Assembly: GCF_964204865.1 (NCBI RefSeq)
Contig: NC_135250.1
Location: 7,316,001-7,380,000 of the forward strand
Direction: 5' to 3'
DNA: 64,000 nucleotides
Source of the DNA: Styela clava
Lineage: Eukaryota
The notes below the pieces were generated by a model. The model saw only the letters and a list, made by a program, of their open reading frames with translations. It made no database searches and had not been told where the DNA came from. A program made the position numbers and the translations under genes. Of the stretch, positions 1-61,934 are shown in pieces. Position 1 is the stretch's first letter; each line of letters starts with the position of its first letter.

Positions 1-2171
1 TTGCATCTTTATTGTTGAAATACATTCTGGATATTTTCCTGGTCTCAGAAATCCTTAAAAATTCATTGGATATTAAATTCGGTTCATTCGTAATAAGAAA
101 GCATTATTGCTTTCGATACGTTTCTGCGTCATATAAAAATAACTTTGCCAGATGGTGACTTTCCAAAACGCGTGTTGAATATCGTCTTGAGACTATATCG
201 ATACCGTTTTATTATCTTTTTATGGCCTCTCACAAAATACCATAAAATTAGCCTCGACGGCCTTATACGTCGTTAATTACGCATGAACTTTGTAGGTTTT
301 TGTTAAATATCATCCCCGCAGAATTCACAATAGCTGTTTATAACGCTAAAAAATACCAATCACATCGTGTCATTATTTATGCTACTGACTTTAGTTTCTA
401 CTTGGCCCGTGATAGGGCATATCCTGATATTGCGTATTCGTAATTTGACTACCCCAAGGGCGTGTCTTGGCCCACTGCTATTCATATATATAATATATCG
501 GGAATCTGGATTATTAATTATAGGTATTCATGCCTTGTCTTTCCTCAACCAACATTATTGGCAGGGCAGCACCATTTTATTCACAGCCTATTTTGTACCA
601 GGATTCTATATGAAAAATATATTTTTTAAGTTAACTAATAAAAACAATACTTCTTTTATCTGTGCATTGTCATTTCTTAACTGGGTGGTGTCCTTTTAAT
701 TATTGACACAAAATCAAGATCTTTCATGCTTGGTATATTTATAACAATGAAATTATAGGCAATTTCAAATCAGAGGCCACTGGGATTGTTCCCTATAATC
801 ATATAATACCACCACAGCCACCCTCTATTATACTTAGATTTTGACTTCATCCTGTTTATGCATTGTCAACCAAGCGTATAAATTGATACACGCCTTCTCC
901 AGAACTGTACTTAGTTACTTACATTTTTTATTTTTCATTTTGAAACCTGAATAGACCTTTTAGGTGTGGTATATTGTTGCTTGGTTACCATAAATATTAT
1001 AGAGTTGTCATGCTACCTAATGTGCCATGCAAAAATAAGTCCATAAGAAGAGAAGACTTTCTGTGGATTTATTTCATCAATATTGTAGAATGAAATCCAA
1101 CAAACCAATTAAGATGATTGGTATTGTTACTGTTAAAATGGTGATTGTGTTGTATTTGTTTTTTTGGTCAATTTTTTATACAATCTTTTGCCAGCCCATA
1201 TGGACTTTTGTCATATTTTTGGGTTTTAGTTCAAGAAATGAAACCTTGGTTCTAAACTTTGGTTCTCAAGTCTCAAATCTATTGTGTCAGTTATATTGCT
1301 AAAGTAGGCTTAGTATTTATCTCCCTAACTTTCTTCGAACAACATAGAAGTCACGTTTTACCCACAGTGGGTATGAAATAATCTGATTAAAATATTTGAG
1401 GCCTTGTAACTAACTCATGCATGAGAACTCCATCCAATTATGAAATAAGATGCATGTGATTGAATGAAATGACCTTATGAGCCTACTATAGATAAAGATA
1501 AATGAAGTGATACCCCAATCTATCTCTATGTTTTGTACACAAAGTTCGGCGATTTGTATTTACCAGTCAAATATGATGATTATATAACTAGTACAACACA
1601 GTATTAATAGATGTAAAATATTCGGATTCAGAAAATAAAATATTATGATTGGTTTGAAAAGCTGTAATACTCCGATAATAGGTGTTCCACTGAGCTACTA
1701 GCCTTTGTAGAAAAATTTGCCAAATTATATTGTTTACATAGTAAGTAGTTAGATTGTTGTCATTTCTCTGTCTTGAGGAATGATATAGTTCCAAACGGTA
1801 TGAAAGCACTTGTTCACTCCTCTACTTTTATTTACTTTGTCAAGGACCCAAACACAATAGATAGTCGTTCGTCAATTGCATCTTACTAAAACCAACAACG
1901 CTAACACAGATCCATTGTCCTTAGTCTTATTGTATCAAATTCCATTTAAAGAAGATTAATAAAGTGTTTGCGTTGTGCGTCTACTCGGAATGTAAAAGGG
2001 CAGAATCTGTTTACTTTCAAGTGAATTTGAATACTCGAATAAATTTGTGCCCGTGCCATTTATCAAGCTGGATGAGATTGTGAAAGCTCTGCGTTTTACA
2101 CATCAGAAAATTTGTTCAAATATATTCCGCAAAATACTATTTTCTCATTTTGAATTTCCTATTTTTTTCAG

Positions 2172-5100
2172 TTACGGCAAAATTGTATCAACGAAAGCTA
2201 TCATTGATCCACAAACTAATTTATGTAAAGGATATGGATTTGTAGATTTTGATAGATTTGACTCAGCAAATCATGCAGTCCAACAATTAAAAGCAAAGGG
2301 GATTCAAGCTCAAATGGCAAAGGTAAAAAGAACATACACGACCATAAACAGAATAGGTCTAAATTTTTTTCCTGTAAATAAAAATTCTAGATATTTAGAT
2401 GAATATATGAGCTTTTATACTTGTTACTATAATATCAAGATCTTTCTAGCCAAACTGACCTTGTCTTCCTGGGATACTTAGTTGTGTTCATTAGTTTATC
2501 GTGACTGAATGTTCCTATAAAAGTTATCAAAACGTGACCAAATACACTTACTTTCTATTATTTATCAAAACAATTTATGTTTTTTTTAGCAACAAGAGCA
2601 AGATCCAACTAATCTATATCTTTCAAACCTCCCTCCTAACTTCAATGAACACGATTTGGAACAAATGCTGCTACCTTTCGGACAAGTGATCTCCACAAGA
2701 ATTTTGCGAGATAATAATGGCGTCAGCAAGGGTGTTGGTTTCGCCAGGATGGAATCAAAAGAAAAATGCGAGCTCATTATAGAAAAATTCAATGGAAAAT
2801 ATCTCGCTAATGGTACTAGTAAGTATATATTAGTAATTTAACAATGGAAAGTAGTGAATATATAGAAAACGCGTTTCACTTTGTTTGTCTGTATAATACC
2901 ATTGTTTTCACCCTGTTGCAGCTAAGAATTTTGAACTGAACAGAATATGAAATAATTGGGCCACCATAGGATGCTGTTTATTTTTTCCACTCCTTTCAAA
3001 ATACCATTTTACGTATATCACAAGTTTGTGTGAATTCACACCCGCTTGTATATTTAGAAGATAATTTCCTGTTTCACCAAACAGGATGAAGAAATTTCTA
3101 CTTTTCTCTACCTAATGTTATTGTGTATATAGTCGTATTTACTATTCGGAGATGTGTATGTAAATTTTGAAAATCCTATGTGTATATATAAAATAGTTGG
3201 GGAAAAAAGATTTGTTCCCAGTATTTATATTTTTTACGATATGGTTTTTTATAAATGGTTATATTTCATTTCAGATCATAGCAGTGATCCTCTGCTGTGC
3301 AAATTTGCAGATGGAGGCCCAAAGAAAAACAAACAACATCAAAAATTCATGGGTAACGGTCGAAGCTGGGGTAATGACCTGCCATTTCAGTATGACCCCA
3401 TCACCCACAATGGGTAAGTTATCGAGTATTATCATTTATATTCCATAAGGCATTTTCGTTTGTACTGACGATTTCTTTGAATAATATTATTATGTATTTT
3501 TTCAGGATGGGTGTTAGCCCCAACAGAATAATGATGCAGCCTTACTTAGCTGGACCAGGAAACCCAGCGTACCAAATTCAAGCCCCACCGGCATGGGTAC
3601 AACCCCCGCCTTATGTGGTTCAATCCCATGCCACCAATTCTGTAAGTAAAATATTGAATGATATGTGAACAGCCTGTGTGTGTGAGTGATTGTAAAAGCA
3701 AATTGATATAATATTTTTCCCTACTATTCTTATAACGAAACCAGATGTAAAAATCATGGTTTTGTATATCATCTTATATTATTATTACTGCTTTATAAAC
3801 TATTCTGGGTTCGGCCACATTTTTTTGCTGTGTAGATTTAATATGAACAGTCACAGTCATGTTTTTTTATTCTATCTACAGGGCACTGTGATATCATCAG
3901 TAGATCCCAACGCAATGCACATGCACCCAAGTGTGATGCCTCAACTTGGACATCTTACAGCTCAAATGACGCAGCTTCAACTTTCACACAATCCTGGCGC
4001 CGTTTCGGTAAATACAATCAATGAAAATTCGGCTGTTATTGTACATGCAGTCCAAAATATTTCTCCAGTTTTACAAGACACTCCGAGAGCAGAAAGTGCC
4101 CCACAAGGACAGATTATGAGCGAAACTCCGAAAAGCAGTAGACCCAGTAAAACAGAAGTAGTACAGCAAGTTATATATCCCACACAACCTGTTTGTACCA
4201 TACCAATCACCAATTCTCCTGACGACCTTTCCCCTCCACCACCCCCAGGATTTACCCTCGCTGATAAAATACACCCAGTTGAGAGTTTTCCTTTGAAAAA
4301 GATTCCGTTCGAAGTTGAACCGTGTTTCCCACCTGCCATACACAAACAGGGAGCACCGCAATGCGAATTGTGTGAACTGTCTATGAAGTGTATTCCCCCG
4401 CCTGACACTCTTCAACCAGTACCTACAGCCCCAATACAGTATGGGGTTCCATATGTAACGACTTATTCTGATACTAATTGCCCTGCTCCTTTTCAAGGGG
4501 TTTTCCCCATTCCCTTTTCTAACAGCTTCAGTGGTAGTATAGTGCTAAACCCCATATCAGCGAATCAAATTCAAGGATGAGAAATTTTTGGAATATAGCC
4601 TTCATCCAGAGATAGCAAGCACACGTTATACAGGAAGTTGGTTAAAATGAATATTTGTGGAGTTAGTTAGCAATTTTTCAAAAAATAATGTGGTAAGGTC
4701 AACATGGTGGAGTTTACATCCAGTTGAGTTATACAGTAGACTTCTTGAGGGTTTCTAGTCAAAGCGATCAATTTTGATAGATACTAGTGTTTTTGTGGAA
4801 AATGATATCTGTAACTTTACCTATGATAGTGATGCAGTTTGTAATCTTTCTTATCAGTGGATCCCAACTTAATGTTGTCGGAATGTCCAGTTGTATATTT
4901 TTCACCATTTACATTCAAAAAGTCGTTTTTAGCAGGTGGATAGACATCCCATTGGTACTTTACCATACCCACATCCTGATTATGCAGGGCATCGATGTCG
5001 TTCTTAAGTGAGGTGACTCATTTACGTGGGATAGTGCAGGGTTCACCCATGTCGCCTTAAATTTAATATTGTTGATCAGATTTCAGTTAGTAAATAAATA

Positions 5101-9600: not shown

Positions 9601-11369
9601 TCAATCCCAAAAATCATGCATGCGCTGTTTCAATGACGTCTCCATATTGAGAATACTATTTAATAATTACGACAGCTCGTTCAGTTTAATTGAGAAATAT
9701 ATTTTTATCGGGCATCGCCAGAATAATGAAGTTCAAACTTGAAATTCTAATTCTATAATTATTTCTTTAATATATTTACTTTAACATTAAATATGGAGAG
9801 GGTGCGAATTCATACTTCCTTTTATTAGTAGTTTGAAATTAAAAGAAAGATCCTCACTAATTTTGTCAGTGATCATCAGATTAGATGTTTGGGCCGTGTA
9901 TATCGAAATGATTACTAGAGCATAGTTTGACAAGAAAAAGTTTCATATCTACTATGCAATTCAATGTAAAAATTTCGATAATTTCAATACGGCGATTTGA
10001 GCTCAATTTGTGGAATTCCGCATAAAGCAATTAAACTAATTTAGCCACATCAGTCGTTTCATTAATCAAATAAAACGTCGCGAGAAATTTTCTAGAAGTG
10101 TTGTGATCCCAGTTCCCATGAAATTAGTTCAATATAATATATACAATATATAGAAGCACCTAAACTCCTTTGTTATAATCCCTATTATCTAAATCGATTA
10201 ATCACATTACAATGAGAGATTAAACATGGAAATAATATAAATATTGGTATTTTGCAAAGCTGTATTCAGTTATAAGCAGTAATCAGTAGTTTTTTTTTTA
10301 CCGCCATATCAAAACAACAGGAAAGTATATAAATAACACAATTCATAACACAAAAAACGATTCTAGAAAATCAAATGTGGTTATCCAATGATGACATCCA
10401 GATTTGCACAAACAAAATAAATGCCATCTATATATATATTACGATTTATTTTAAAAAATTTGTACTCTACGCAAAATCAAAACATCTTGCTCGGATGTCA
10501 AAAACCTCACCCAAACGCAGCTCACAGGGACAGAGGTATGTAAATTTGTACTCAAAGTAAAGTCAAAATACCTCGAACAGAAGTCGAACAAAATCACTAA
10601 AAAGCAGTAACTCACAGCTCACAAGTACCGATATCAAAGAGGTTAATCAACATTTTGAAAATATACGCTCCATAATTCATATTTATTCTTCTCTTTGCGT
10701 CAATGCAGAGTTTTATCGTTGAGAATTAGATAGTTGAATAATATTTCATTTTTTAAGTGGTTTTAAGAAACTTCACCTTTTGTGGTCTTCTCTGTAAATA
10801 CAATTACCGGTAATCTATTTTTGCCCATCAATTCTCGGAATTCATTATTCTTACATCCTTTTAAGTACGATTTATATTGTACCAAAATAACCATTGTCTG
10901 AAACATATCAATTATAGGCTACCTAAATTTATTTGAACTGGTGATCACCATTTATTTCTAATTACTAATGAAATCAGTTTGAGTTTCTAAATCGGAAAAT
11001 TCTAGAAATTGGTAAAGACAGTCTGGCGATTTTGTAACGTTTTTGGTCGTTTATAAATCCCTGGTGACAAAATTTTAAATTAGAATTGCCCGGTGTAAGA
11101 AATTAGAGTCAAAACTTTGAATTTGATGGAGTCAAACAAAATATTTCGGAGTCAGTACTCCGATTTAAGGTCAGACTGGTTCACAGCGTTAAATTAATCC
11201 TAAATGATCAAAGTCACAACATTATATGCACTCGCACTGTTTTTGCCACACGACTCTCTGAAATTGCCTTAAATATGTATATATGGTAATATCAAATGAT
11301 GAAAAGCTCGTACGATATCTTGTTGGTGACATCCTGAAGTAACAATATTTTAACGAGATAGCGATCAGA

Positions 11370-11630: not shown

Positions 11631-12266
11631 TATTGTTGTTAGTTTCTTAAATTCAACTTCTGATTCCACATTTTAAACTGTACAATGGCCAGGATGTAAA
11701 TTGAGTGTAATACTATCTAAGCATCCTCCAAAGATTGAACAAATAACGGAAATATAATTTATAAGCATAGTGAAGGAGGAATGTGAAAAAAATCGGAAAT
11801 ATAGATAACGAGAGGAATATGTCAAAAAAGGTTGGGAAACACATAGACAGACATTAAATTGATATATCGCCAGTTTCCAATCGAACCAAATTAATTTCCT
11901 GGCAATTACAATTTAATCCTTTCTTTGGGCATTGTTAGGAGAAATAATTTGAACCTATGCATTTGTCGTGTTTGGCCGAAGAAAATAATCTGCGTGAGGT
12001 TCAACATTTTTTTCGAAATTATAAAAAAATTTATGTAAGTATTTAAATACTAGACTTATCAAATGTCATGCGTTCTATGATATGTCCGTTATTATATCAA
12101 AGTTATTAATTTCATAATTATAGCCTGACTAAAAAATAATGAACAATTGAATTAAAACCGATCGTATAAAAACGGAATAAAATGATATTTTGGTTACTTG
12201 GTTACTGGCCTTCAATAGGAACAGAACTTGTGATACATAGACCTTTTAAAGGTTTGTTGAATCAAA

Positions 12267-13484
12267 ATGGAGTTCTACAACATGAAATATGGAATCATAC
12301 TTTTCCTGATGCTGAGTTCCGGTATACCTTCATGTATAGGTAACACAGAATTTATGAGTAACAATTATCATAACTCGTTGATATTCTACTCGTTGATTAT
12401 CATACTTTGTTGATAAAATTGGATTTAAAGATGTTCGAAAAGTCGAATATTCTTCAGTATACTGGATACTCACGAATTTCGTCGTTGGTAGTCTTAATCT
12501 TCGAGTAAATGGTAAACTAGCATGTTATACAACTAAAATGACAAGTCATTGTGCACTAAATGCTCATTAACTAATAATTATTACATGCGAATTCTATTTA
12601 TAATTTCATTTTGCAGGTTGCCATTCTCCAATACCACCAAGTGGCGGTCACTCTCATTTATTATCGCAGCTTCTCGGACTGACAACGTCTTACATCGATT
12701 ATTGTTCGAAATACGCAGTAAGTCATTTTAGTACCGGTATCTTCAGCTCTTCCGTGATTCACCTTACGATAATAAGGAGTAATAGCAACAGAATTCGAAC
12801 CTGAAAACGACTTGCCAGGATAGCCAGAGGCATGAGCGTTGTTTCTGACACTTAGTCCGATGAACCAAGCATCCAATTTTTAATTGTTTCGGCCATTTTG
12901 TAACGTTGGGTTATTTATAACAGCTAATATCATATAAAAATGATTTGTTTAGTTGGATTTTGATGATGAGTTACTGTATGAAATTGCCGAAAATGATCCG
13001 GAACTGGTGGAAACATTGGAAGCAGGACAAAATCAATGGTACGCAATAATGTTGGACAATTTATGGGAAACAGAGACCTGCCAAGATCCTTCACTTGAGG
13101 ATTTTTGCGAAAAGTTTGAGGTGAGAATAATCCGTTGCTAAAATTAACTATATATATTATATATATTATTTACAAATTTTGTACTCTATCTGTATATTAG
13201 TTGGATTCGAACTCAAAGTCTATAATCACTCACCAAATGTTCGATACAGAGTTTCACAGAGAGGTTAGCAGTTACCAATTAATAATTTGATTAATTAATT
13301 TAATTTCTGTTAACCTCATTCTGTCCATTCTGCAAATTTTCAAGGCAACGGGTTACATGAGTAAAAATCAACAATACATGATATGTTACAGTTCGTAACT
13401 TTACTCTAGATTTATTAATAATCTTTATTAAATACTGATTTTCATTTTATTTTTCAGGAATGTATAATCGATTTAAATACGTGA
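12267..13484 (+). CDS. Uncharacterised small secreted acidic protein (~122 aa, 4 coding exons)
   Basis: Exons 12267-12339, 12617-12717, 12953-13120, 13458-13484 with canonical sites and matching phases (1,0,0). Product: MEFYNMKYGIILFLMLSSGIPSCIGCHSPIPPSGGHSHLLSQLLGLTTSYIDYCSKYALDFDDELLYEIAENDPELVETLEAGQNQWYAIMLDNLWETETCQDPSLEDFCEKFEECIIDLNT*. Hydrophobic N-terminus resembles a signal peptide. Confidence 0.75.
12745..12874 (-). mobile_element. tRNA-derived SINE fragment in intron
   Basis: Minus strand shows A-box-like TGGTTCATCGG and B-box GGTTCGAATTC at SINE-like spacing. Confidence 0.45.
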
Positions 13485-16400
13485 TTTCAAATGGTATGAA
13501 ATGACAATGATGAAATATCTATAATTTTCTTTATTGAAATATGTACTTCAAAATCAGAAAATCTCTGCTGCAGAGAGAAATGACACCTGTTCCGCGAGTT
13601 CACGATTGTTTTCAACAAATTGGGAAACTATAATCGACAAACTCGAGCGATTTATGTCAGTTTTGTGGTGCTTTGTATGCTGGTAAACAATGCAATGCTT
13701 TTAAACACGTAATGATTCAACAGCCTAATATCACAAAATGAAATTTAAAATTTCTGTGTGGTTGCGGAAACACGGTGAAAAAATAAAATTACAGACCAAT
13801 TTGTTGGTTGGATTAATTAAATTTCGCTATCCCAAAGATACGCTGTGATTGATTATTTCTATCCAATGAACCCCAAGAAAACATAAATATTCGAAATTTT
13901 CACCGTAAAGCAAGACAGCATATATTCTGTAATAAGTGGACTTATCTGACGACGAAGCAGTCCGTCTATTGAAGCAAATCTGTTATTTGAAAAAATATTA
14001 AAATATCATGAATCGGAAAAAAGACACTAGAACGCTATTACTTTTACCTACGGGCCAAATTTTTTATTCGTAAATTTTTCTATTTTTTTTTATAATTCAT
14101 TGGCACACTTTTAAATAACATCTGGTACATTCATTTAATATTTAATTGGAATTACTGACATCGCGGGTGTTATTTGACCTCCGTTGCCATATATTTAAGA
14201 ATTTCTTTATTGTAATTCTATATTATTTACACTTATTGACTTTTATCTAACTATCTAATTTATTTGAAACTGTATGTTCAGCTAATACTTCACTGTGCTT
14301 TATTTAAATAAAATAATTTATGTGAAAATGGTCGACTACTCATTTACTAAAACTTTTTTAAAAAAATTTGGGGAAATCGAATCTTGGTTAGAACAATCAA
14401 CTGAAATTGAGATTATAAGACGACGTGAGAGTTCAATACACAACCAATTAATTAGAAACGTTGGCGCCACAAACGCGCATATCCGTTGACGTTTTTCAGA
14501 GAAGACTTTGTGACTAATGTAATTAGAAGGTAGTTAGTAAATATATAATGGGATATACTGTATTGTACTGGTTACGTCACGAGGGTGAAATAGATAGAAG
14601 TCACAACTTCCGTTACAAATTTAGTGAAACGCAATCGAATATCGTGAAAAACATTGAAATTGTTTCAAACGTTCTTAACAGTCGTTTAGTAAGTGATGGT
14701 GTTGGGGAATACAGAGCTATCGTTTTTAAAAAAGTAAGGGGCAACAAAAATCCTTAGTTGAGACATGAGGAGTTATTGTTTATTTGTTTTATGATTCTAC
14801 ACTACAGGGTTGCATAATATGTTGTCTTCTACAAATGGATTTCTGACGCAATAATGATGAACTGTGACGCGTCGCTTGAATTCTCTTGCGCGATGTTCTT
14901 GCTGTATACTTTTTGATTTATAAATGGCATTTGTTCAGCTCATAATTATTTGGATCAGATTTATTGTGAATTTGTAACATTGGCTTGACAAGATCAACTT
15001 ACTTTGATAGTTATTTGAGAAAGTACGTTGAACAGAATGTAATTTTATATGGAAATGATAAGGGTTTGATAAGCCAATGGGCACTTTTTAATTGAAATTA
15101 TTTGTCGGGTCAGCTCGATTAGTGGAAATAATCAGGCGATAATTAACTTTATATAATGATAGGGTATTAGAAAATTTAATTTGAAAGAAACCAAATTCAA
15201 ATAACATTAAAATAATTGATTCTAAGAAACAGAATTGATAACTAACGGGCACGTGCGGACTGGTAAATTTGCCAAAACAATTTACCCGATCGTAGAAGTC
15301 TTGGTTCGAAAACGGGCTCCAACTAGGTCGCATTCTCTTGATTTACACTCAATATACCAGAGCCGTGATCTCGAGGGGAATTTACAATCGTCGTCTGGCT
15401 GAAAACAAGTTTGCTACTCCCGTAGTGTATGTACAAGGTTACGGTTAGGCCATAATTTTATTCCGATTTTAGTTCTATTACGAGTTTCGGAGACTGGCTG
15501 TGTTAGCCAAGTGAATATACCCCCTCTCCATAGGTTTCGGTCACTTTATACAACTTGATGTAAAGTGGGCGAACAAAATAAAACTAGTTACATTCATATT
15601 GGTACATTTTTGTGGCGCCGAAATTTCAACCTCCCGCGGAAATCAAGAGTACAAAAACTTTGGCGTAAGCAAGCACTATTTAATAGAATGTCCGAACCGC
15701 TAAGTCGACTTAATATCTGAAGATTATCACAATTAAAGATCTGAAATTTTGACCCCTACTCCCGAGAGTTGAAAATACGACCCAGACTGCAATAGAAATT
15801 TCTATTCCTCAGCCCTTCGGGAATTGTCCTATTAAACTAAGTGCATCTGTGACAGCTATAGAGATGGACGATTGTGAGAAAAACGAGTAATAAAAAAACT
15901 TTTTGTTTGAAAATGGACTAGATATTTAGTTTCGGTCTGCCCGTCGTTATACATTTAAAAAACTATCCATCAGCATGGTGATTTGTATATAACGTACTTA
16001 ATTTTTAAATATATATATAGCGAGAGTAAAAATATTGGACCTGTCACTTATTTATTCATATATTTTGTAGGGAGTGGTAACAGACTCTGATGACCTCATT
16101 TTGCGTATGTTTGTTTCCTAGTCTGACGAAAGTAATAAATTGTTTCCCCGCTATATTCATTCATTGTAACCTTCTGGAAACGTTAGTTAACACCCCCCAA
16201 AAATATTCTAGTAATGATCTTTTTCTGCTTTAATAAAACATCATTTCAAAACTCTCATGTACCTCATTTATTCAAGTAATTTTTTTCTCAAAAGAAATAA
16301 AATTGAATGTACCCTCGTTTCTGTATGTTATGTTCTGCATTGTGTTATCAAACTTCCCTCCTCTGGAGTATTAAAAAAATAAAATATCAGTCGGGATAGA

Positions 16401-28260: not shown

Positions 28261-28896
28261 GGGTCTTACTACTTACTGAATACAGCGCGAAACACCGCAA
28301 AGAGCGCAGAACAGCGCGAAACAGAGGGAAACAGCGCAAAACAGGAGACGCAGTCATTACCACCTCCTGCCACGAAAAAACCACGGCGCCTCTCGCCATT
28401 GTTTTATGGCGCTATTTCCGGTATATTTACAAGGTTATGTACCGGATTATAAGTCACCATGCGAAATTTTATCTACGGTACCTTTTTGGTGCTCCAGAAG
28501 TATGTGCACCAATATGTCGCACAACCTGAATCCGCTACACACACATACACACATACTATTTTCAGGTTGTGCGCCATCTTGGTGCACATACTTCAGGAGG
28601 TCCCTTTTTACCTAACCCTAAAGCCAACCATATTCATATGGAAAATGTTCTAAATTATGGTACCTGCCATTACAGCATTACTGGCTACATACGTTGGTTT
28701 GTGTTTTTAATTCGCTGCCGTGGTACTCCAACTCAGAACAAGATGCCCCGAACTCATTGCAAAAATTTTTTCTGCTTCACACTGTTTCCCTATGTTTTGC
28801 GCTCTTTCGCGCTGTTTCCTCACTGTTTTGTGCTGTTTCCCTCTGTTTCGCGCTCTTTGCGGTGTTTTGCGCTGTATTCAGTAAGTAGTAAGACCG
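28261..28896 (+). mobile_element. Foldback-type MITE copy 1 (Mutator/Merlin-like)
   Basis: TIR (G/C)GGTCTTACTACTTACTGAATA plus 10-bp subterminal repeats (AAACAGCGC[A/G]); 8-bp TSD GATGCAAG at 28253-28260 and 28897-28904. Confidence 0.92.
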
Positions 28897-30499
28897 GATG
28901 CAAGTCAAGTGTATATGGAATTAAGCATACAGTATATATTTAGACCTGACTAGGCTAAATAGATGATTATCAAACTATAATATAAAATTTTAATTGCATC
29001 AAAGATTGTTTTATAGCCTTTAATGGCCTTTATACTTGAACCAAATAAATGTAATTCCGGAATCTGGACCAACAGATAATCCATATTTATAGAATTAATT
29101 TCATTTCAAAATGGCAAAAGCTCCATTCTTATTATATGTTCATCAAAACTATGGTATACTGTATATCAGCAATGCAACGTAGTAAGGTTAACTTGAATAG
29201 GTCTAGGTAAAGGGTAACTGATACTCAGAGTTAAAGCGTGAGAAACTGAAGTTATGGAACATAGGTATAGTCACAAACCACAGACCGGCCATAATAAAAG
29301 TTATTTCATAATGCACAATAACATGGAGATTTTTATATCATGGAGATGAGCTGCTCAGTTTCACCCTCAATTAGGGCTTACTGGCTTATAATAAAATTTC
29401 ATCAGATATTATTAAAAGAAGGCATTCGCAAAACAACAAGAACAGCATAAATCAGAAATGAAGCTCTTGATACACTTTTTATGAAAAAGATTCACGAGTT
29501 CCCAAATATAAGTGTTTTGCAAAGATTTCTCCCATTTTCAGACTTTATTAATAAAGAAAGACGAGTATTATACTTTAATAGGGAAGGTACTTAGTCCAGT
29601 GGTTTCTATAACAAGAAGAAAACACAATGAATTTGATGAAGTTTAAATAGAATATACTTTTTCTTGTTTACACTATCAAACGCCAATTTCTGAAAACTAT
29701 CTTTCGGGTCTACTAGTGTAGTTTAGCACCACAAGTATTTCTGGTGGGCATAGCATAACGAATTTTGCATATGTCATTCCTGTAATAAATATTGTTTTCG
29801 ATACCTATGTTATATTCAATATGTTAATTTTTATATGAAATAAATTTTCATACAAGCAATGCCTTCCATCGTGCATTTTCATAGAAGCGATGGACCAACT
29901 GATGAATACCCTGACCCCATAACAGATTCTTGTCGCCCAAAGCACCATCAAATAGTGAGGTAAGGATTACTTATACCATAATTTAACTTTGGATCATAAT
30001 TTAACAGGATCTGTCACCAGATACTTCATTTGATACAGAGACATGCGAATCTGACGAAAGTGAGGAAAGATTGTCAGGGATCCAACCAGATTTGCCCCCA
30101 GACTCTTCAGTTGAAACTACCTCAAGTGCCGCTAATGAAAATGACAGTGCTTTGTCAGACAGCAGAAAAATGTAAGCAAGCATCATCATCATTTTATTTT
30201 GGTTCTCTGGCATAAAACAACACAAAAGTCAACATACAAACAAAACGCAGAGAAAACTTGAAGTCGAGCATAACTTTGATATAGATTTCACCTACAAGAA
30301 AACGAAATAATAATAATACAAGGGCACGAAAGCATTAACAAGATTCAGAATCAGGCAACACTTTTAACGTAATTCAAAATGAGAAAGCACACTTCTTCCA
30401 GCATTGGTGTCATATTTGCTAACTGTAAAAATGATGAATAAAGAAGGAAAATTAATATTGAAGACTTGGGACTTCATGCTGAATTTTTTACAATCTATT

Positions 30500-32265: not shown

Positions 32266-33063
32266 CGGTCTTACTACTTACTGAATACAGCGCGAAACAC
32301 CGCAAAGAGCGCAAAACAGCGCGAAACAGCGCAAAACAGCGCGAAACAGCGCAAAACAGAGGGAAACAGCGCAAAACAGTGTGAAAACAGCGCGAAAGAG
32401 CGCAAAACAGAGGGAAACAGTGTGAAGCAGAAAAAAAATTTGCAATGAGTTCGGGGCACCTTGTTTTGAGTTGGAGTACCACGGCAGCAAATTAAAAACA
32501 CAAACCAACGTATGTAGCCAGTAATGCTGTAATGGCAGGTCTGCCCCTGCTGGAGACACATTTTGGGTACCATAATTTAGAACATTTTTCATATGGATAT
32601 GGTTGGCTTTAGGGTTAGGGTTAGGTAAAAAGGGATCTCCAGAAGTATGTGCACCAAGATGGCGCACAACCTGAAAATAGTATGTGTGTGTGTGTGTGTG
32701 TAGCGGATTCAGGTTGTGCGACATATTGCTGCACATACTTCTGGAGCACCAAAAAGGTAGATAAAATTTCGCATGATGACCTATAATCCGGTACATAACC
32801 TTGTAAATATGCCGGAAATAGCGCCATAAAACCATGGCGAGAGGCGCCGTGATTCTTTCGTGGCAGGAGGTGGTAATGACTGCGTCTCCTGTTTTGCGCT
32901 GTTTCCCTCTGTTTTGCGCTGGTTTCCTTCTGTTTCGCGCTGTTTTCCTCTGTTTTGCGCTGTTTCGCGCTATTTTGCGCTGTTTCGCGCTCTTTTGCGC
33001 TGTTTCGCGCTGTTTTGCGCTCTTTGCGGTGTTTCGCGCTGTATTCAGTAAGTAGTAAGACCC
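32266..33063 (-). mobile_element. Foldback-type MITE copy 2 (inverted)
   Basis: Same TIRs and internal sequence as copy 1 in reverse; 9-bp TSD CCCTACACA at 32257-32265 and 33064-33072. Confidence 0.93.
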
Positions 33064-33234
33064 CCCTACACAAGCCTAGGTCCATTTTTGCAATGCATAA
33101 CAACAAGACGTGAAGCTGCCTTTGTTTATTTATTATATTTCAACGTGAATCTGTTGGCCACGATCTGACACCTAGTGGTAGTTTACTACTTACCGTCGTC
33201 TGCACAACTTTTTCGCAGCGAAACGCGGGTAGAC

Positions 33235-34014
33235 GGGTCTTACTACTTACTGAATACAGCGCGAAACACCGCAAAAAGCGCGAAACAGCGCAAAAGAGCG
33301 CGAAACAGCGCAAAATAGCGCGAAACAGAGAAAAACAGCGCGAAACAGAAGGAAACCAGCGCAAAACAGAGGGAAACAGCGCAAAACAGGAGACGCAGTC
33401 ATTACCACCTCCTGCCACGAAAGAACCACGGCGCCTCTCGCCATGGTTTTATGGCGCTATTTCCGGTATATTTACAAGGTTATGTACCGGATTATAGGTC
33501 ATCATGCGAAATTTTATCTACCTTTTTGGTGCTCCAGAAGTATGTGCAGCAATATGTCGCACAACCTGAATCCGCTACACACACACACACACACACATAC
33601 TATTTTCAGGCTGTGCGCCATCTTGGTGCACATACTTCTGGAGGTCCCTTTTTACCTAACCCTAACCCTAAAGCCAACCATATCCACATGGAAAATGTTC
33701 TAAATTATGGTACCCAAAATGTGTCACCAGCAGGGGCAGACCTGCCATTACAGCATTACTGGCTACATACGTTGGTTTGTGTTTTTAATTTGCTGCCGTG
33801 GTAATCCAACTCAAAACAAGGTGCCCCGAACTCATTGCAAAATTTTTTTCTGCTTCACACTGTTTCCCTCTGTTTTGCGCTCTTTCGCGCTGTTTTGCGC
33901 TGTTTCCCCACTATTTTGCGCTGTTTCCCTCTGTTTTGCGCTGTTTCGCGCTCTTTTGCGCTGTTTCGCGCTCTTTGCGGTGTTTCGCGCTTTATTCAGT
34001 AAGTAGTAAGACCG
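33235..34014 (+). mobile_element. Foldback-type MITE copy 3
   Basis: Same TIRs; 9-bp TSD CGGGTAGAC at 33226-33234 and 34015-34023. Confidence 0.93.
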
Positions 34015-58100: not shown

Positions 58101-61100
58101 CCAGCAAAGAGTTTTTGACCGGCCCGCTGACTGTATCCAACAGTCTGTAATGTGGTCCAACGCATCATTCTTGAAAGTTACCGATCGCTCTACTCTCACC
58201 GTAATGTCAGTGCGAGCTGGTGAAATAAACAATTGTCTTAGTGAATAAACAATATAAGGTCAAAGCAGAGCGCGTTGTAAACATTCCCAACTACTGTTAT
58301 CAGTTATATTTAGATTCTAAATATAAATCGATTTTAGAAATTAGATTTTATATTGAGTTTTATTAACCATGGAATATCCCAAGAATCGTAAAGTTGACAG
58401 AGTGTCGAGCAAAACATTTAACAGAGATTGATTACCGAAGTATCTTTTGTAATGATCCGGCCCGCCGAGGACTTCATTTTCCCCACATCTGGCTCGCCAC
58501 TGGAGAAGTTGCCCACCCCTGTATTATTAGACTGTTAATTTAGATGGTTGTCACACGGGTAATGCAAAGATTGTGACGTCACTTCGAATACAGTATCGTA
58601 TGCAAAGATCATTCCATAATACTCAGAAGCGTAAGCAATCCAGTTCCAAAATCAGGGCTTGAAGTTGAATCCTCACCTGGTTAGATACCCAGACTGCCAA
58701 ATTTGCGTTGACTATGTATAGGATTGAAAAAATATGTTAAGATAGCTTAATGATATGGTGAACTCCGATCATCAACTACCAATGTGTGAGGATTGAATGA
58801 ACATAAAAGATTTCAGTTTTCTTCAAATTGTAGCTTCTACACACGTGTGTTGCCTCTTGTACATAGTCTGTGTGATGTTTTCCATTTTGATATAAAATTA
58901 GTATTTTTTGTTTTTGTAAATTACAGATGAATCTTCAGAAACTGCGGATTGCAGTAACGATACAAAATCAGAACCAACAACAGGTAAGTCAATCTTGAAT
59001 ACTTTCAGTTCATGGTCAATTTTATAACAAATCACATCAGTCATCACTCGTTTTTTTTTATTGAATGGGAAGCATCGAACCGAATCTAATCAAAGATATT
59101 TTCACCTCTCCTAATTAAAGTACATTGCTTTGAAATGCCATTAATTTCTATTTTTTTATAGGATGTTTTTTACATTCACTTTAATCAACCCAAGGCAACA
59201 ACTGCTGCATTTAGCAGGGTTTGAATCATTCCGATTCAGAATTGGGTACTGTGGGAAGTATGTGAACGAAGATGGCGGACACCAGAACGTATTATGTGTA
59301 CTGAGATAGGGTTAGGCCATAATTCCAGGTACAAATACTGAGGGAGTCACTTGGCTAGTCCCGCCATCTTGGTTCACATACTTCGGGAGTACCCAGCAAT
59401 GTGCTCTCAATTTATTACACTCTGGGTGAAGTGATAGCTCTTGGGGCTAGACCCATGCACTTTAGCCTCAACGGCCAGCATAGTTCCAAAACTAACTTAA
59501 TTAAACAGAAACCAAATTTTTTTGTAGTTCCCTAGCCACGATTTTTAAACTGTGATGATAGCATATTTAACCACTAGTTTGGTTAGTCATTGCCTTATTG
59601 ATCAATGCAAATCGATATTTTTTCAATTTTGTGTATTTATTTTAAAATTTTAATTTTTCAGGCACAACACATCCTAATGACAAAGTAGAAAAATCCAATG
59701 AAGACACAGGATTGAAGCAATTGACTGCTAAATACACACGTGTTGGTTCTGCACAACTAATAACAAGACCTGTATCGACCGCAGCTAATGACCGTGTTGA
59801 ACCAAAATATTTCAAAACCTGTGCTGAACCATATGAAAGTACTGCAAATTTCAAAACCAAATCCTTGTCCGCAAAATCCGAAAGTAAAGCTGCTAATGAC
59901 AAAAGTAAAATTGCAGAAAAACGAACAGAAAAATTTGTAGTGCGAAATATTAGCAAGGTTTCAAAATTATATAAAGTGTCGAATTTAAATTACAGAATCA
60001 AACCAGTGCGACATATGACTCCTAAAAACTTGGTTTGTCCTGTTATTTACGTTGGTGAGCCCGCGTTTGTTGATCCCGAAGATTTTTGTGATGGTGATGC
60101 TAACAACTCGTCTTCGCCACTGATTTCTTCATCTTTTACAGAAGAAATACTTAATGACGTAAACGAAAACAATCTCTACGATATAGATTCATTGAAACAG
60201 GTTTTTATTCCAAATGAAACTTCAAAAACAATAACCACTATTAAGATGCCATTACATTTTCCAAGTGCTGCTCAGCCGTCCTTCATTCCAAAAACTGAGA
60301 TCTTGCCGGTAATGAGCGTACCGAACTACAAGCCTGCCAGTGTGCTTATAAATACTGTAACACCGAACTCAAACCAGGGCTATAAAATCGTGGCACGAAC
60401 TGTTCCGTCCGCCACTTTGGCTCAATCGAATTCAATTCAAGCCAGTAAACTAGGAGGAGCAAATTATAGCACATTTACAGTTCCATTCTCAGCAATGAAA
60501 AAGCTTATTTCATTTAATGCCAGGCAAATTTCAAATGAAGTTAAAGTGAAGGCCAAACAGACGCCAACGAAGCAACCAACAGTTGTTGTGGCACCAAAAT
60601 CTCCTATTACATTTTCTTCACCAGGGCTTGCAAGCACAGAAACCTCCATTGTATCCAAAGTAAAGACGTTTACAATACCACCAGCTATCAGAACAAAATC
60701 AAAGTCTGACCAATCTCTCAATATTAGTGCAGCCAAACCTACAATCAAGCCATTGCCTGTTATAAGTCCTCTATCCGCTCAAAAAGTTCCTAAAACTGCC
60801 ATACACCCATTGCCTGCTCTGAATCTCCCGTCTGCACAGGTTATCACTATTAAACCTGGCAACACTGGAGCTGTCATTCAGACGACACAGTGTAATAAAA
60901 CTATCATTGTTTCAGCATCGCAAGCTAATCAAGTCATACGTATTGATGATAAAGCAAAAGTAAGTATCAGTAAATTTGTGACTGCGAGTAAAGCAAACAT
61001 TACAAAAACTGTGGTTGCAAAACCTGAAAATATGACATCGAGTCCTCCAAAGTTTGCACCTTTGCGAGAAGGTGTTGAAGTCGCATTTGAAGATGGCGTC

Positions 61101-61934
61101 AAACATTTTATTACAAGTTTACGACAATTGACGTTTCTTGATGACGAACTAGTAAAATCCTGGTCTCAACTGAAAAAAGGAACCAAAGTTGCTGCTAAAT
61201 GGAAGGATGGTTTTGTATACGATGCCACTGTAGTTGCGTGTTATTTTAACACAAAAAAAAATGACGCAGAACCAAAGAAAGTAGAAATTACAAAAACAAC
61301 GCAACCAGTAGTGAAACTTATTAAAATATCCGATCAAAAAATACCAAATTTAAAAGGAAAGGAGGATCAAAAGTCCAACATAGGTTGTACTGGATGTAAA
61401 AAAATATTTTCATCCGTGATATTATTCCGCAAACATCAAAAGTTACTTTGTAAAAGTCCTGGCGTTATCATAGAAGATAAAAACGCAGGACTTACTGATG
61501 CTGTCCTTGAAGCAGTAAAAAAATGCGAAAAAAATAGTAACAAAAATTTAAAAAAAACTGCTAAAATTGAGAATACTGCTACAAAACCAGCAAATAAAGC
61601 ATCAAAGAGATCAGCGAGTGATGAAAGCGTACAAGTCTCGAACAAACGTCGCAAAATTGAAGATGTCTGTTCTCCTAAATCTTCAAACACTAAATCATTC
61701 ATCAGTAAAGATGAAGGCGCTTTATTCAAAAACGGCACGAAATTTTTACACAGATGGCAGTTGGATGATGGCGAAAGTAAGTGGTACCAGGGAGAAGTTA
61801 TAAGAGTAATTCCACCATTCAAAGCTTTTCTTGATCAAGAATTCGAGGTGAAGTACAAGGGTGAAAAGGAGATCTATATACTTAAACTTTATGAAGATTA
61901 CCCAACTGATATAAGACTGATGGGCAAAAGTTAA
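55155..61934 (+). CDS. ~946-aa putative chromatin protein: acidic N-terminus, P/T/K-rich linker, Tudor-like domain, C2HC zinc finger, C-terminal Spindlin-like Tudor domain
   Basis: Exons 55155-55239, 56342-56593, 57162-57245, 57916-58005, 58927-58983, 59662-61934; all introns phase 1. Motifs: LKKGTKVAAKWKDGFVYDATV, CTGCKKIF..LFRKHQKLLC, GTKFLHRWQLDDGESKWYQGEVI..FEVKYKGEKEIYILKLYEDY. Confidence 0.85.
57266..57480 (-). mobile_element. SINE copy (5'-truncated) in intron
   Basis: Reverse-complement match to ~36790-37013, including the (ATCCT)n tail. Confidence 0.75.
58081..58521. mobile_element. hAT-type MITE in intron
   Basis: TIR CAGGGGTGGGC / GCCCACCCCTG with CCGGCCCGC subterminal motifs; no clean TSD. 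Confidence 0.7.
59243..59395. mobile_element. ~150-bp palindromic MITE
   Basis: Arms TGGGTACT..GAAGTATGTGAACGAAGATGGCGG / CCGCCATCTTGGTTCACATACTTC..AGTACCCA. Relatives at ~15415-15620, 21620-21830, 40615-40715 and inside the three foldback MITEs. Confidence 0.7.

What the first reader, a model, noticed from the sequence alone, without database searches (positions are those of the whole stretch)
12267..13484. Hidden 4-exon gene for a small secreted, extremely acidic Cys-containing protein
Seen: clean splice phases give ~122 aa with a signal-peptide-like first exon, a His/Pro/Ser-rich then amphipathic exon 2, and an acidic helical-looking remainder (21 D/E versus 2 K and no R after the signal), with 5 Cys after the signal. 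I recognise no family. Known: ascidian clavanin/styelin precursors have a signal + peptide + anionic tail layout. Inference: a novel defence-peptide precursor, cytokine-like ligand or metal-binding secreted protein. It is the best candidate in this window for an undescribed gene.
Basis: partly seen in the sequence, partly recalled or inferred. Interest (0 to 1): 0.75.

Follow-up and report, generated by a model that had tools for sequence, protein, structure and literature searches.

The report
Annotated orphan acidic secreted sea-squirt protein

Summary
Four GT-AG exons (12267-12339, 12617-12717, 12953-13120, 13458-13484) give 122 aa. The four pieces sit at residues 1-24, 26-58, 59-114 and 115-122 of a public protein, XP_039271100.2, "uncharacterized protein LOC120345634 [Styela clava]". 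So the gene is not hidden; it is annotated but unnamed and unstudied (0 papers).

- **Copy number:** one copy in its own genome.
- **Relatives:** an HMMER scan of 1.84 billion proteins with exon 3 found one real relative. It is a 90-aa ORF on a 1607-bp ENA contig, 51% identical, with both cysteines and a donor-like exon end kept.
- **Families:** no Pfam or PDB sequence match.
- **Protein:** short hydrophobic N-terminus, net charge -19, no Arg, no dibasic site, 5-6 Cys.

I read it as a secreted protein that stays in one piece and is held by disulfides, not a clavanin/styelin-type peptide precursor.

Searches of earlier findings by sequence and by words returned nothing on other DNA, and a blank by sequence means nothing. 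Low interest.

The parts
12165..12171 (+). TATA-like box (TATAAAA), about 100 nt upstream of the ATG; putative core promoter
   Evidence: Pattern match; function inferred, not tested
12267..12339 (+). Coding exon 1 (73 nt, ends in phase 1): Met1 to Ile24 plus the first base of Gly25; signal-peptide-like
   Evidence: equals residues 1-24 of XP_039271100.2; in-frame TGA 3 codons upstream
12340..12616 (+). Intron 1 (277 nt), GT..AG
12617..12717 (+). Coding exon 2 (101 nt): Gly25 to Ala58; CIGCH motif completed here, then a Pro/Ser/Gly/His-rich stretch and a Leu-rich segment ending at Cys55
   Evidence: equals residues 26-58 of the public protein; single copy in own genome
12718..12952 (+). Intron 2 (235 nt), GTAAGT..AG
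   Evidence: no tRNA by ARAGORN; only a self match in own genome for 12735-12905
12953..13120 (+). Coding exon 3 (168 nt, phase 0 at both ends): Leu59 to Glu114; 18 D/E, 1 K, 2 Cys; the only part with a detectable relative
13121..13457 (+).
13458..13484 (+). Coding exon 4 (8 codons plus TGA): Glu115 to Thr122, holds Cys116
13782..13787 (+). First AATAAA after the stop codon (about 300 nt downstream); putative polyadenylation signal
   Evidence: Pattern match; not tested

Best explanation
This is the single-copy Styela clava gene LOC120345634, already in RefSeq as an uncharacterised protein.

Shown: it has four coding exons and a 122-aa product.

Inferred: the short hydrophobic N-terminus is a cleaved signal peptide. 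That leaves a mature chain of about 97-103 residues with net charge about -19, no Arg, and 5 or 6 Cys.

Inferred: the chain has no basic cleavage site at all, and its cysteines are spread from the N-terminal CxxC to the last exon. So it most likely stays in one piece and folds into a small, largely helical globular domain stapled by disulfides.

Inferred, weakest step: it works outside the cell, or in secretory granules, as a binding protein or ligand whose strongly anionic surface engages cations or a cationic partner.

It belongs to a lineage-restricted, fast-changing family with one detectable relative.
For: - **Gene model:** the exon pieces map to residues 1-24, 26-58, 59-114 and 115-122 of XP_039271100.2, with canonical GT-AG introns.
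- **Conservation:** P0002 is 51% identical over exon 3 at E 1.1e-06 library-wide. Both Cys and 27 of 56 columns are invariant. It reads on as Val-Ser exactly where our donor GT begins. Its only match in this genome is this exon, E 6.4e-10.
- **Secretion:** the hydrophobic core is only about 10 residues, too short for a membrane span. The C-terminus has no hydrophobic tail. P0002 carries two N-x-T sequons.
- **One piece:** 0 Arg and only 3 isolated Lys.
- **Helical tendency:** hydrophobicity over residues 35-122 peaks at 98 degrees, and 3 of 2000 shuffles reach it.
- **Transcription, indirect:** four small runs of one 2020 study, guessed to be RNA, hold 0.26-0.41 of the sampled words of 12200-13700. 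A spliced mRNA with UTRs would give 0.36 and the CDS alone 0.17.
Against:
- No signal-peptide predictor was available, so the cleavage site and the Cys count (5 or 6) are open.
- No 3D model (closed).
- The helical periodicity is not significant in single segments (147, 748, 926 and 331 of 2000 shuffles). It is absent in P0002's exon-3 stretch (1160 of 2000). A crude Chou-Fasman pass with recalled parameters calls residues 40-55 and 85-91 strand-like.
- Two RefSeq versions of the protein differ at 8 of 122 residues. That is about as much as the genome's 1.72% heterozygosity would allow with no constraint (passage), so within-species constraint is not shown.
- The proposed binding role rests on composition alone.
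Confidence: 0.55

Rival explanations
1. It is a defence-peptide precursor of the ascidian clavanin/styelin type. A signal peptide is followed by an active peptide (exon 2), which is released from an anionic C-terminal propiece that neutralises it during storage.
For: Signal-like exon 1 and an acidic remainder. The same species makes clavanins and styelins in haemocytes (passages in PMC9966394 and PMC10608444). Other notes of this scan describe several orphan signal/peptide/acidic-tail genes in this genome (unchecked).
Against: The exon-2 piece has 1 K, 1 D, 3 H and 2 Cys, so it is not cationic. Clavanins and styelins are described as linear helical peptides, and botryllin's mature peptide carries +11.2. 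There is no Arg and no dibasic or furin-type site anywhere. The 'tail' holds 3 to 4 of the Cys and the conserved hydrophobic positions. No sequence kinship to any such precursor appeared in the searches.
Confidence: 0.07
2. It is a helical cytokine-, hormone- or pheromone-like signalling ligand restricted to styelid ascidians, acting through a cell-surface receptor.
For: Size, signal peptide, helical periodicity over residues 35-122, terminal cysteines that could staple the N- and C-terminal segments, fast sequence change, and four coding exons.
Against: No sequence match to any cytokine or hormone family. The fold could not be tested. The intron phases (1, 0, 0) and an exon 1 that holds the signal only are generic features of secreted proteins. 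A net charge of -19 is unusual for such ligands (the comparison is from my own knowledge).
Confidence: 0.12
3. It is a metal- or cation-binding secreted protein. The N-terminal Cys/His cluster (CIGCH...H.H) and the carboxylate-rich body would bind transition metals or calcium.
For: 2 Cys and 3 His lie within residues 23-38, and there are 21 D/E in about 100 residues.
Against: No match to any metal-binding family. The PDB sequence hits to cytochrome c4 (E 0.7, 17 residues) and ferritin (E 1.3, 20 residues) are at chance level. The relative P0002 has only 8 D/E in the same 56 columns, so the extreme acidity is not conserved. The segment starting at Asp60 fails the EF-hand loop pattern at positions 6 and 8 (pattern recalled, read).
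Confidence: 0.1
4. It is not a functional gene. It is a neutrally drifting, lineage-specific open frame that the annotation pipeline picked up.
For: 8 of 122 residues differ between two RefSeq versions. There is only one relative anywhere. I saw no direct transcript evidence.
Against: Exon 3 has stayed open with both Cys, the hydrophobic positions and the exon end across about 50% divergence. All six Cys are kept between the two alleles. All splice sites are canonical. Small runs guessed to be RNA hold a share of words that fits a spliced mRNA.
Confidence: 0.06

Closest known systems
RefSeq XP_039271100.2 / .1, 'uncharacterized protein LOC120345634 [Styela clava]'
   Same: Version .2 is identical over all 122 residues to the four exon pieces. 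Version .1 is 114 of 122 identical with all Cys kept.
   Different: Nothing; this is the gene itself. The record carries no function, and neither identifier occurs in the searchable full texts (supplements not searched).
P0002, an unnamed 90-aa ORF on a 1607-bp ENA contig (organism unknown)
   Same: 51% identity over exon 3. 27 of 56 columns are invariant, including both Cys, the DP turn and the hydrophobic positions. It has the same exon end. It is a reciprocal best match with this exon.
   Different: It is only an exon-sized piece read through into flanking DNA. It is much less acidic (8 against 18 D/E) and has two N-x-T sequons that the Styela protein lacks. Its contig could not be fetched (closed).
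Clavanin/styelin/botryllin antimicrobial-peptide precursors of styelid ascidians
   Same: Same animal group; a signal peptide first and an acidic C-terminal part.
   Different: Those release a linear, strongly cationic peptide of 23-37 residues. Here the corresponding stretch is neutral and Cys-bearing, no cleavage site exists, and there is no sequence similarity.
Saposin-like proteins (SAPLIP), a resemblance recalled from memory
   Same: A small secreted protein with six Cys that starts C-x2-C and then has about 28 residues to the third Cys (read).
   Different: The later Cys spacings (x45, x8, x4) do not fit the recalled saposin pattern. The first Cys may be lost with the signal peptide. Pfam lists no SapB family even at E up to 10.

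Membership tests
RefSeq gene LOC120345634 (identity with the public model) | Translation of the four exons equals the public protein | tested here: met
   Pieces found at residues 1-24, 26-58, 59-114 and 115-122; the split codon G|GT gives Gly25; name
Clavanin/styelin-type ascidian AMP precursor | N-terminal signal peptide | tested here: met
   Hydrophobic core GIILFLMLSS by hydropathy only; no dedicated predictor available
Clavanin/styelin-type ascidian AMP precursor | A linear, cationic, amphipathic peptide of about 23-37 residues following the signal (as described in passages) | tested here: not met
   Exon-2 piece has 1 K, 1 D, 3 H, 2 Cys; helical hydrophobic moment at most 0.46 in this stretch
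Clavanin/styelin-type ascidian AMP precursor | Proteolytic release of the peptide from the propiece | tested here: not met
   0 Arg, 3 isolated Lys, no dibasic or R-x-x-R site; non-basic cleavage cannot be excluded
Clavanin/styelin-type ascidian AMP precursor | Sequence kinship to known members | tested here: not met
   3 hits at E up to 0.001 in 1.84 billion proteins, none of them such a precursor; the word search with alignment A1 returned only P0001 and P0002
Saposin-like proteins | Match to the SapB_1/SapB_2 profiles | tested here: not met
   Not listed at E up to 10
Saposin-like proteins | Saposin fold with 1-6, 2-5, 3-4 disulfides | not testable with these tools
Short-chain four-helix cytokines | Up-up-down-down four-helix bundle | not testable with these tools
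Only a hydrophobic periodicity of 98 degrees over residues 35-122, reached by 3 of 2000 shuffles
Short-chain four-helix cytokines | Sequence match to a cytokine family or solved cytokine | tested here: not met
   Pfam: best E 0.13, far under the cut-offs. PDB sequences: only cytochrome c4 at E 0.7
c-type cytochromes (CXXCH haem site) | CXXCH motif | tested here: met
   CIGCH at residues 23-27
c-type cytochromes (CXXCH haem site) | Cytochrome c domain around the motif | tested here: not met
   No cytochrome family in Pfam at E up to 10. The PDB match is 17 residues at E 0.7. The motif straddles the likely signal-peptide cleavage region

The most novel reading that the evidence does not exclude
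The protein founds a styelid-specific family of secreted, disulfide-stapled helical proteins with a dedicated extracellular role. One possibility is a fast-evolving signalling or recognition ligand (cytokine-, pheromone- or gamete-recognition-like). Another is a free-standing anionic partner that binds and silences the animal's cationic haemocyte peptides. Both would be a fold and function not yet described in tunicates.
Probability: 0.12. Interest if true: 0.55.

Novelty: new member of a known kind. Interest (0 to 1): 0.25.

Why it matters
As it stands this is one more lineage-restricted small secreted protein of a sea squirt, and its gene model is already public, so the gain is modest. The report confirms the model and shows that it is single copy with one relative elsewhere. 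It also argues against the peptide-precursor reading.

It would matter more if a structure model or expression data tied it to immunity, reproduction or metal handling. Tunicates are the closest invertebrate relatives of vertebrates, and their secreted ligands are poorly known.

Tried and rejected
**Led nowhere**
- Word-index protein search with exon 3: blank. It only sees proteins of 31-98 aa, so the blank says little.
- ESM Atlas: closed for new sequences, and it does not hold the public protein.
So I obtained neither a spliced transcript contig nor the DNA around the relative.
- Scans of JGI metagenome contigs and GTDB genome contigs with the exon-3 alignment: 319 and 85 pattern matches, none confirmed by tblastn.
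- Paper searches: the gene and protein identifiers gave 0 papers. One broad search gave only irrelevant listings.

**Considered and rejected**
- Kinship with P0003, a 1904-aa bacterial protein with Ig-like and secretion-tail domains. Its library E of 6.6e-06 comes from 5 copies of one short look-alike...EAG...WY..(I/V)..LD. That motif is not kept in the true relative P0002. I take it as chance plus repetition.
- Paralogues L002 and L003: E about 1.9, two copies of the same repeat with stops just upstream. Not significant.
- A tRNA-derived element in intron 2, which I thought I saw by eye: ARAGORN finds none, and the stretch matches only itself in the genome.
- EF-hand, saposin, insect odorant-binding protein and haem-c readings: no profile support.

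**Supplements** were closed. The expression tables of the S. clava genome paper (PMC7540406; I saw passages only) might list this gene's level by developmental stage.

Full report
**What is in the sequence**

Reading 11800-14000 and checking boundaries by script gives four + strand exons:
- 12267-12339 (73 nt)
- 12617-12717 (101 nt)
- 12953-13120 (168 nt)
- 13458-13484 (27 nt including TGA)

Each intron begins GT (GTAACA, GTAAGT, GTGAGA) and ends AG after a T-rich tract. Translated one by one, the pieces are 24, 33, 56 and 8 residues. The codon split between exons 1 and 2 (G|GT) adds a Gly, which makes 122 residues.

An in-frame TGA lies three codons before the ATG. A TATAAAA sits at 12165, and the first AATAAA after the stop is at 13782.

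**The gene is not hidden**

Exon 3 alone was used in two searches:
- The word-index search was blank. It can only see proteins of 31-98 aa, so this says little.
- The HMMER scan of 1.84 billion representative proteins returned three hits at E up to 0.001.

The best hit, P0001, is 122 aa. It holds the four exon pieces at residues 1-24, 26-58, 59-114 and 115-122. Its source name is XP_039271100.2, "uncharacterized protein LOC120345634 [Styela clava]". An earlier version, XP_039271100.1 (P0004), is in the same 90% cluster.

So the window comes from the sea squirt Styela clava, and NCBI's pipeline already predicts exactly this protein. Earlier notes of this scan had also named the species, and here the name rests. 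Neither identifier occurs in the searchable full texts; supplements are not searched.

From my recollection of NCBI's rules, purely ab initio models without protein support are not kept. An orphan XP record would therefore imply RNA-seq support. I could not check that here.

**Relatives**

The gene is single copy. Exon 3, exon 2 and the relative P0002 each find only this locus in the 377-Mb assembly at a meaningful E-value.

The one real relative anywhere is P0002, a 90-aa ORF called on a 1607-bp ENA contig of unknown organism.
- It is 51% identical over exon 3 at E 1.1e-06 for the whole library.
- In a gap-free alignment, 27 of 56 columns are invariant. These include both cysteines, the Asp-Pro pair and most large hydrophobic positions.
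- Just past the last aligned residue, P0002 reads Val-Ser where our intron starts GTGAGA. Val-Ser is the translation one expects of a GTAAGT-type donor, so the exon end seems conserved.
- P0002's ends outside this block look like read-through, not coding sequence.
- The reciprocal search makes an orthologue in another ascidian the likely reading.

A profile search with the three sequences found nothing more. Scans of JGI metagenome and GTDB contigs confirmed nothing.

The third library hit, P0003, is a 1904-aa bacterial surface protein. It matches only through five copies of one short motif that P0002 lacks. I discount it.

**Family tests**

| Search | Result |
|---|---|
| Pfam, exon pieces and P0001 | Nothing better than E 0.05, all far under the cut-offs (XPC-binding, DUF6900, phage endonuclease I) |
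| PDB sequences, P0001 | A 17-residue match to cytochrome c4 at E 0.7, on the CIGCH motif |
| PDB sequences, exon-3 profile | A 20-residue match to a ferritin at E 1.3 |

The protein is an orphan by every sequence test available.

**What the protein looks like**

- **N-terminus:** one Lys is followed by a hydrophobic core of about 10 residues, then small residues. That is too short for a membrane span and typical of a signal peptide.
- **Cleavage:** by the -3/-1 rule (recalled), cleavage could follow Gly19, Ser22 or Gly25. The first two leave six Cys and the last leaves five. The other allele has Pro at 22, which would disfavour cleavage there.
- **Mature chain:** 21 D/E, 2 K, no R, 3 H, and net charge about -19. 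It has no C-terminal hydrophobic tail or retention motif.
- **Cysteines:** they sit at 23, 26, 55, 101, 110 and 116 and so link all four exons' products.
- **Helical tendency:** hydrophobicity over residues 35-122 has its strongest periodicity at 98 degrees, reached by 3 of 2000 shuffles.
- **Against that:** the single segments are not significant (147, 748, 926 and 331 of 2000). P0002's stretch shows no such peak (1160 of 2000). A crude Chou-Fasman pass with recalled parameters calls two stretches strand-like.

I therefore take "mostly helical" as likely, not shown.

**Precursor or one-piece protein**

Clavanins (23 residues, His-rich) and styelins (32 residues) of this same species are described as linear helical peptides. 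The related botryllin is cut from a 158-residue pre-propeptide to a 37-residue peptide of charge +11.2. These points come from passages of PMC9966394 and PMC10608444.

Here the stretch after the signal is neutral and holds two Cys. There is no Arg, no dibasic site and no Gly-Lys/Arg amidation signal. The acidic part carries the conserved hydrophobic positions and three to four Cys. That is the make-up of a folded domain, not of a spacer. I rate the defence-peptide-precursor reading at about 0.07.

**Evolution**

The two RefSeq versions differ at 8 of 122 residues: positions 22, 75, 89, 93, 94, 95, 104 and 107. Seven are in exon 3, and all six Cys are kept.

The genome's reported heterozygosity is 1.72% (passage of PMC7540406). 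With that figure, eight amino-acid differences are at or above what no constraint at all would give. The numbers are small and I had no DNA of the second allele.

Together with about 50% divergence from the only relative, this marks a fast-changing protein whose core and cysteines are nevertheless kept.

**Expression**

This is the weak point. The look-up of sequencing runs listed the following:
- Four runs of one 2024 study that hold all sampled words, probably the source DNA.
- Four small runs (48-57 million letters) of one 2020 study, guessed to be RNA, that hold 0.41, 0.31, 0.28 and 0.26 of the words of 12200-13700.
- Four runs of two other studies that hold next to none.

If a spliced mRNA with UTRs covered the stretch, 532 of 1471 31-mers (0.36) would be exonic. 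The CDS alone would give 0.17.

**Verdict**

It is a real, family-less gene for a secreted-type protein, but it is already annotated and is unlikely to be a clavanin-like precursor.
- The most likely mechanism is a secreted, uncleaved, disulfide-stapled, strongly anionic small domain that binds cations or a cationic partner, or acts as a ligand.
- Only the gene structure, the composition and the conservation are shown. Secretion, fold and activity are inferred.
- Interest is low to moderate.

Noticed in passing
window 11107-11205 (-): Weak Rfam match to the C/D-box snoRNA family snR40 over the whole model (30.1 bits against a gathering score of 50, E 0.0034), about 1 kb upstream of the gene. 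By eye I saw CTGA motifs but no clear C box.
   Followed up: partly
L002 1414-1698 (-) and L003 1414-1698 (-) (G000 C1 near 19.07 Mb and C6 near 1.98 Mb): Two near-identical copies of a repeat carry a short open frame with W-x4-C-x-DPS-x4-CEK-x-E, the same motif as the end of exon 3. The genome-wide E is only about 1.9 and stops lie just upstream, so this is probably chance.
   Followed up: partly
window 28569-28943 (+), 32278-33106 (-), 33451-33804 (+): Three ORFs share long identical peptide stretches, so a repeated element is present in at least three copies. The 32-34 kb bin is the GC-richest of the window at 0.455.
   Followed up: no
window 2047-2481 and 3756-4580 (+): Open frames that by eye look like RRM-type RNA-binding exons (GYGFVDF motif) followed by a Pro/Gln-rich C-terminal exon. 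This is probably the neighbouring upstream gene. Not tested.
   Followed up: no
window 59712-61934 (+): A 740-aa uninterrupted open frame, Lys/Ser/Thr-rich with a C2H2-like Cys/His pair near residue 560. Not examined.
   Followed up: no
window 12953-13120 (exon 3), P0001 against P0004: Seven of the eight amino-acid differences between the two RefSeq versions of this protein fall in exon 3, three of them at consecutive residues 93-95. This points to unusually high allelic diversity for a coding exon.
   Followed up: partly
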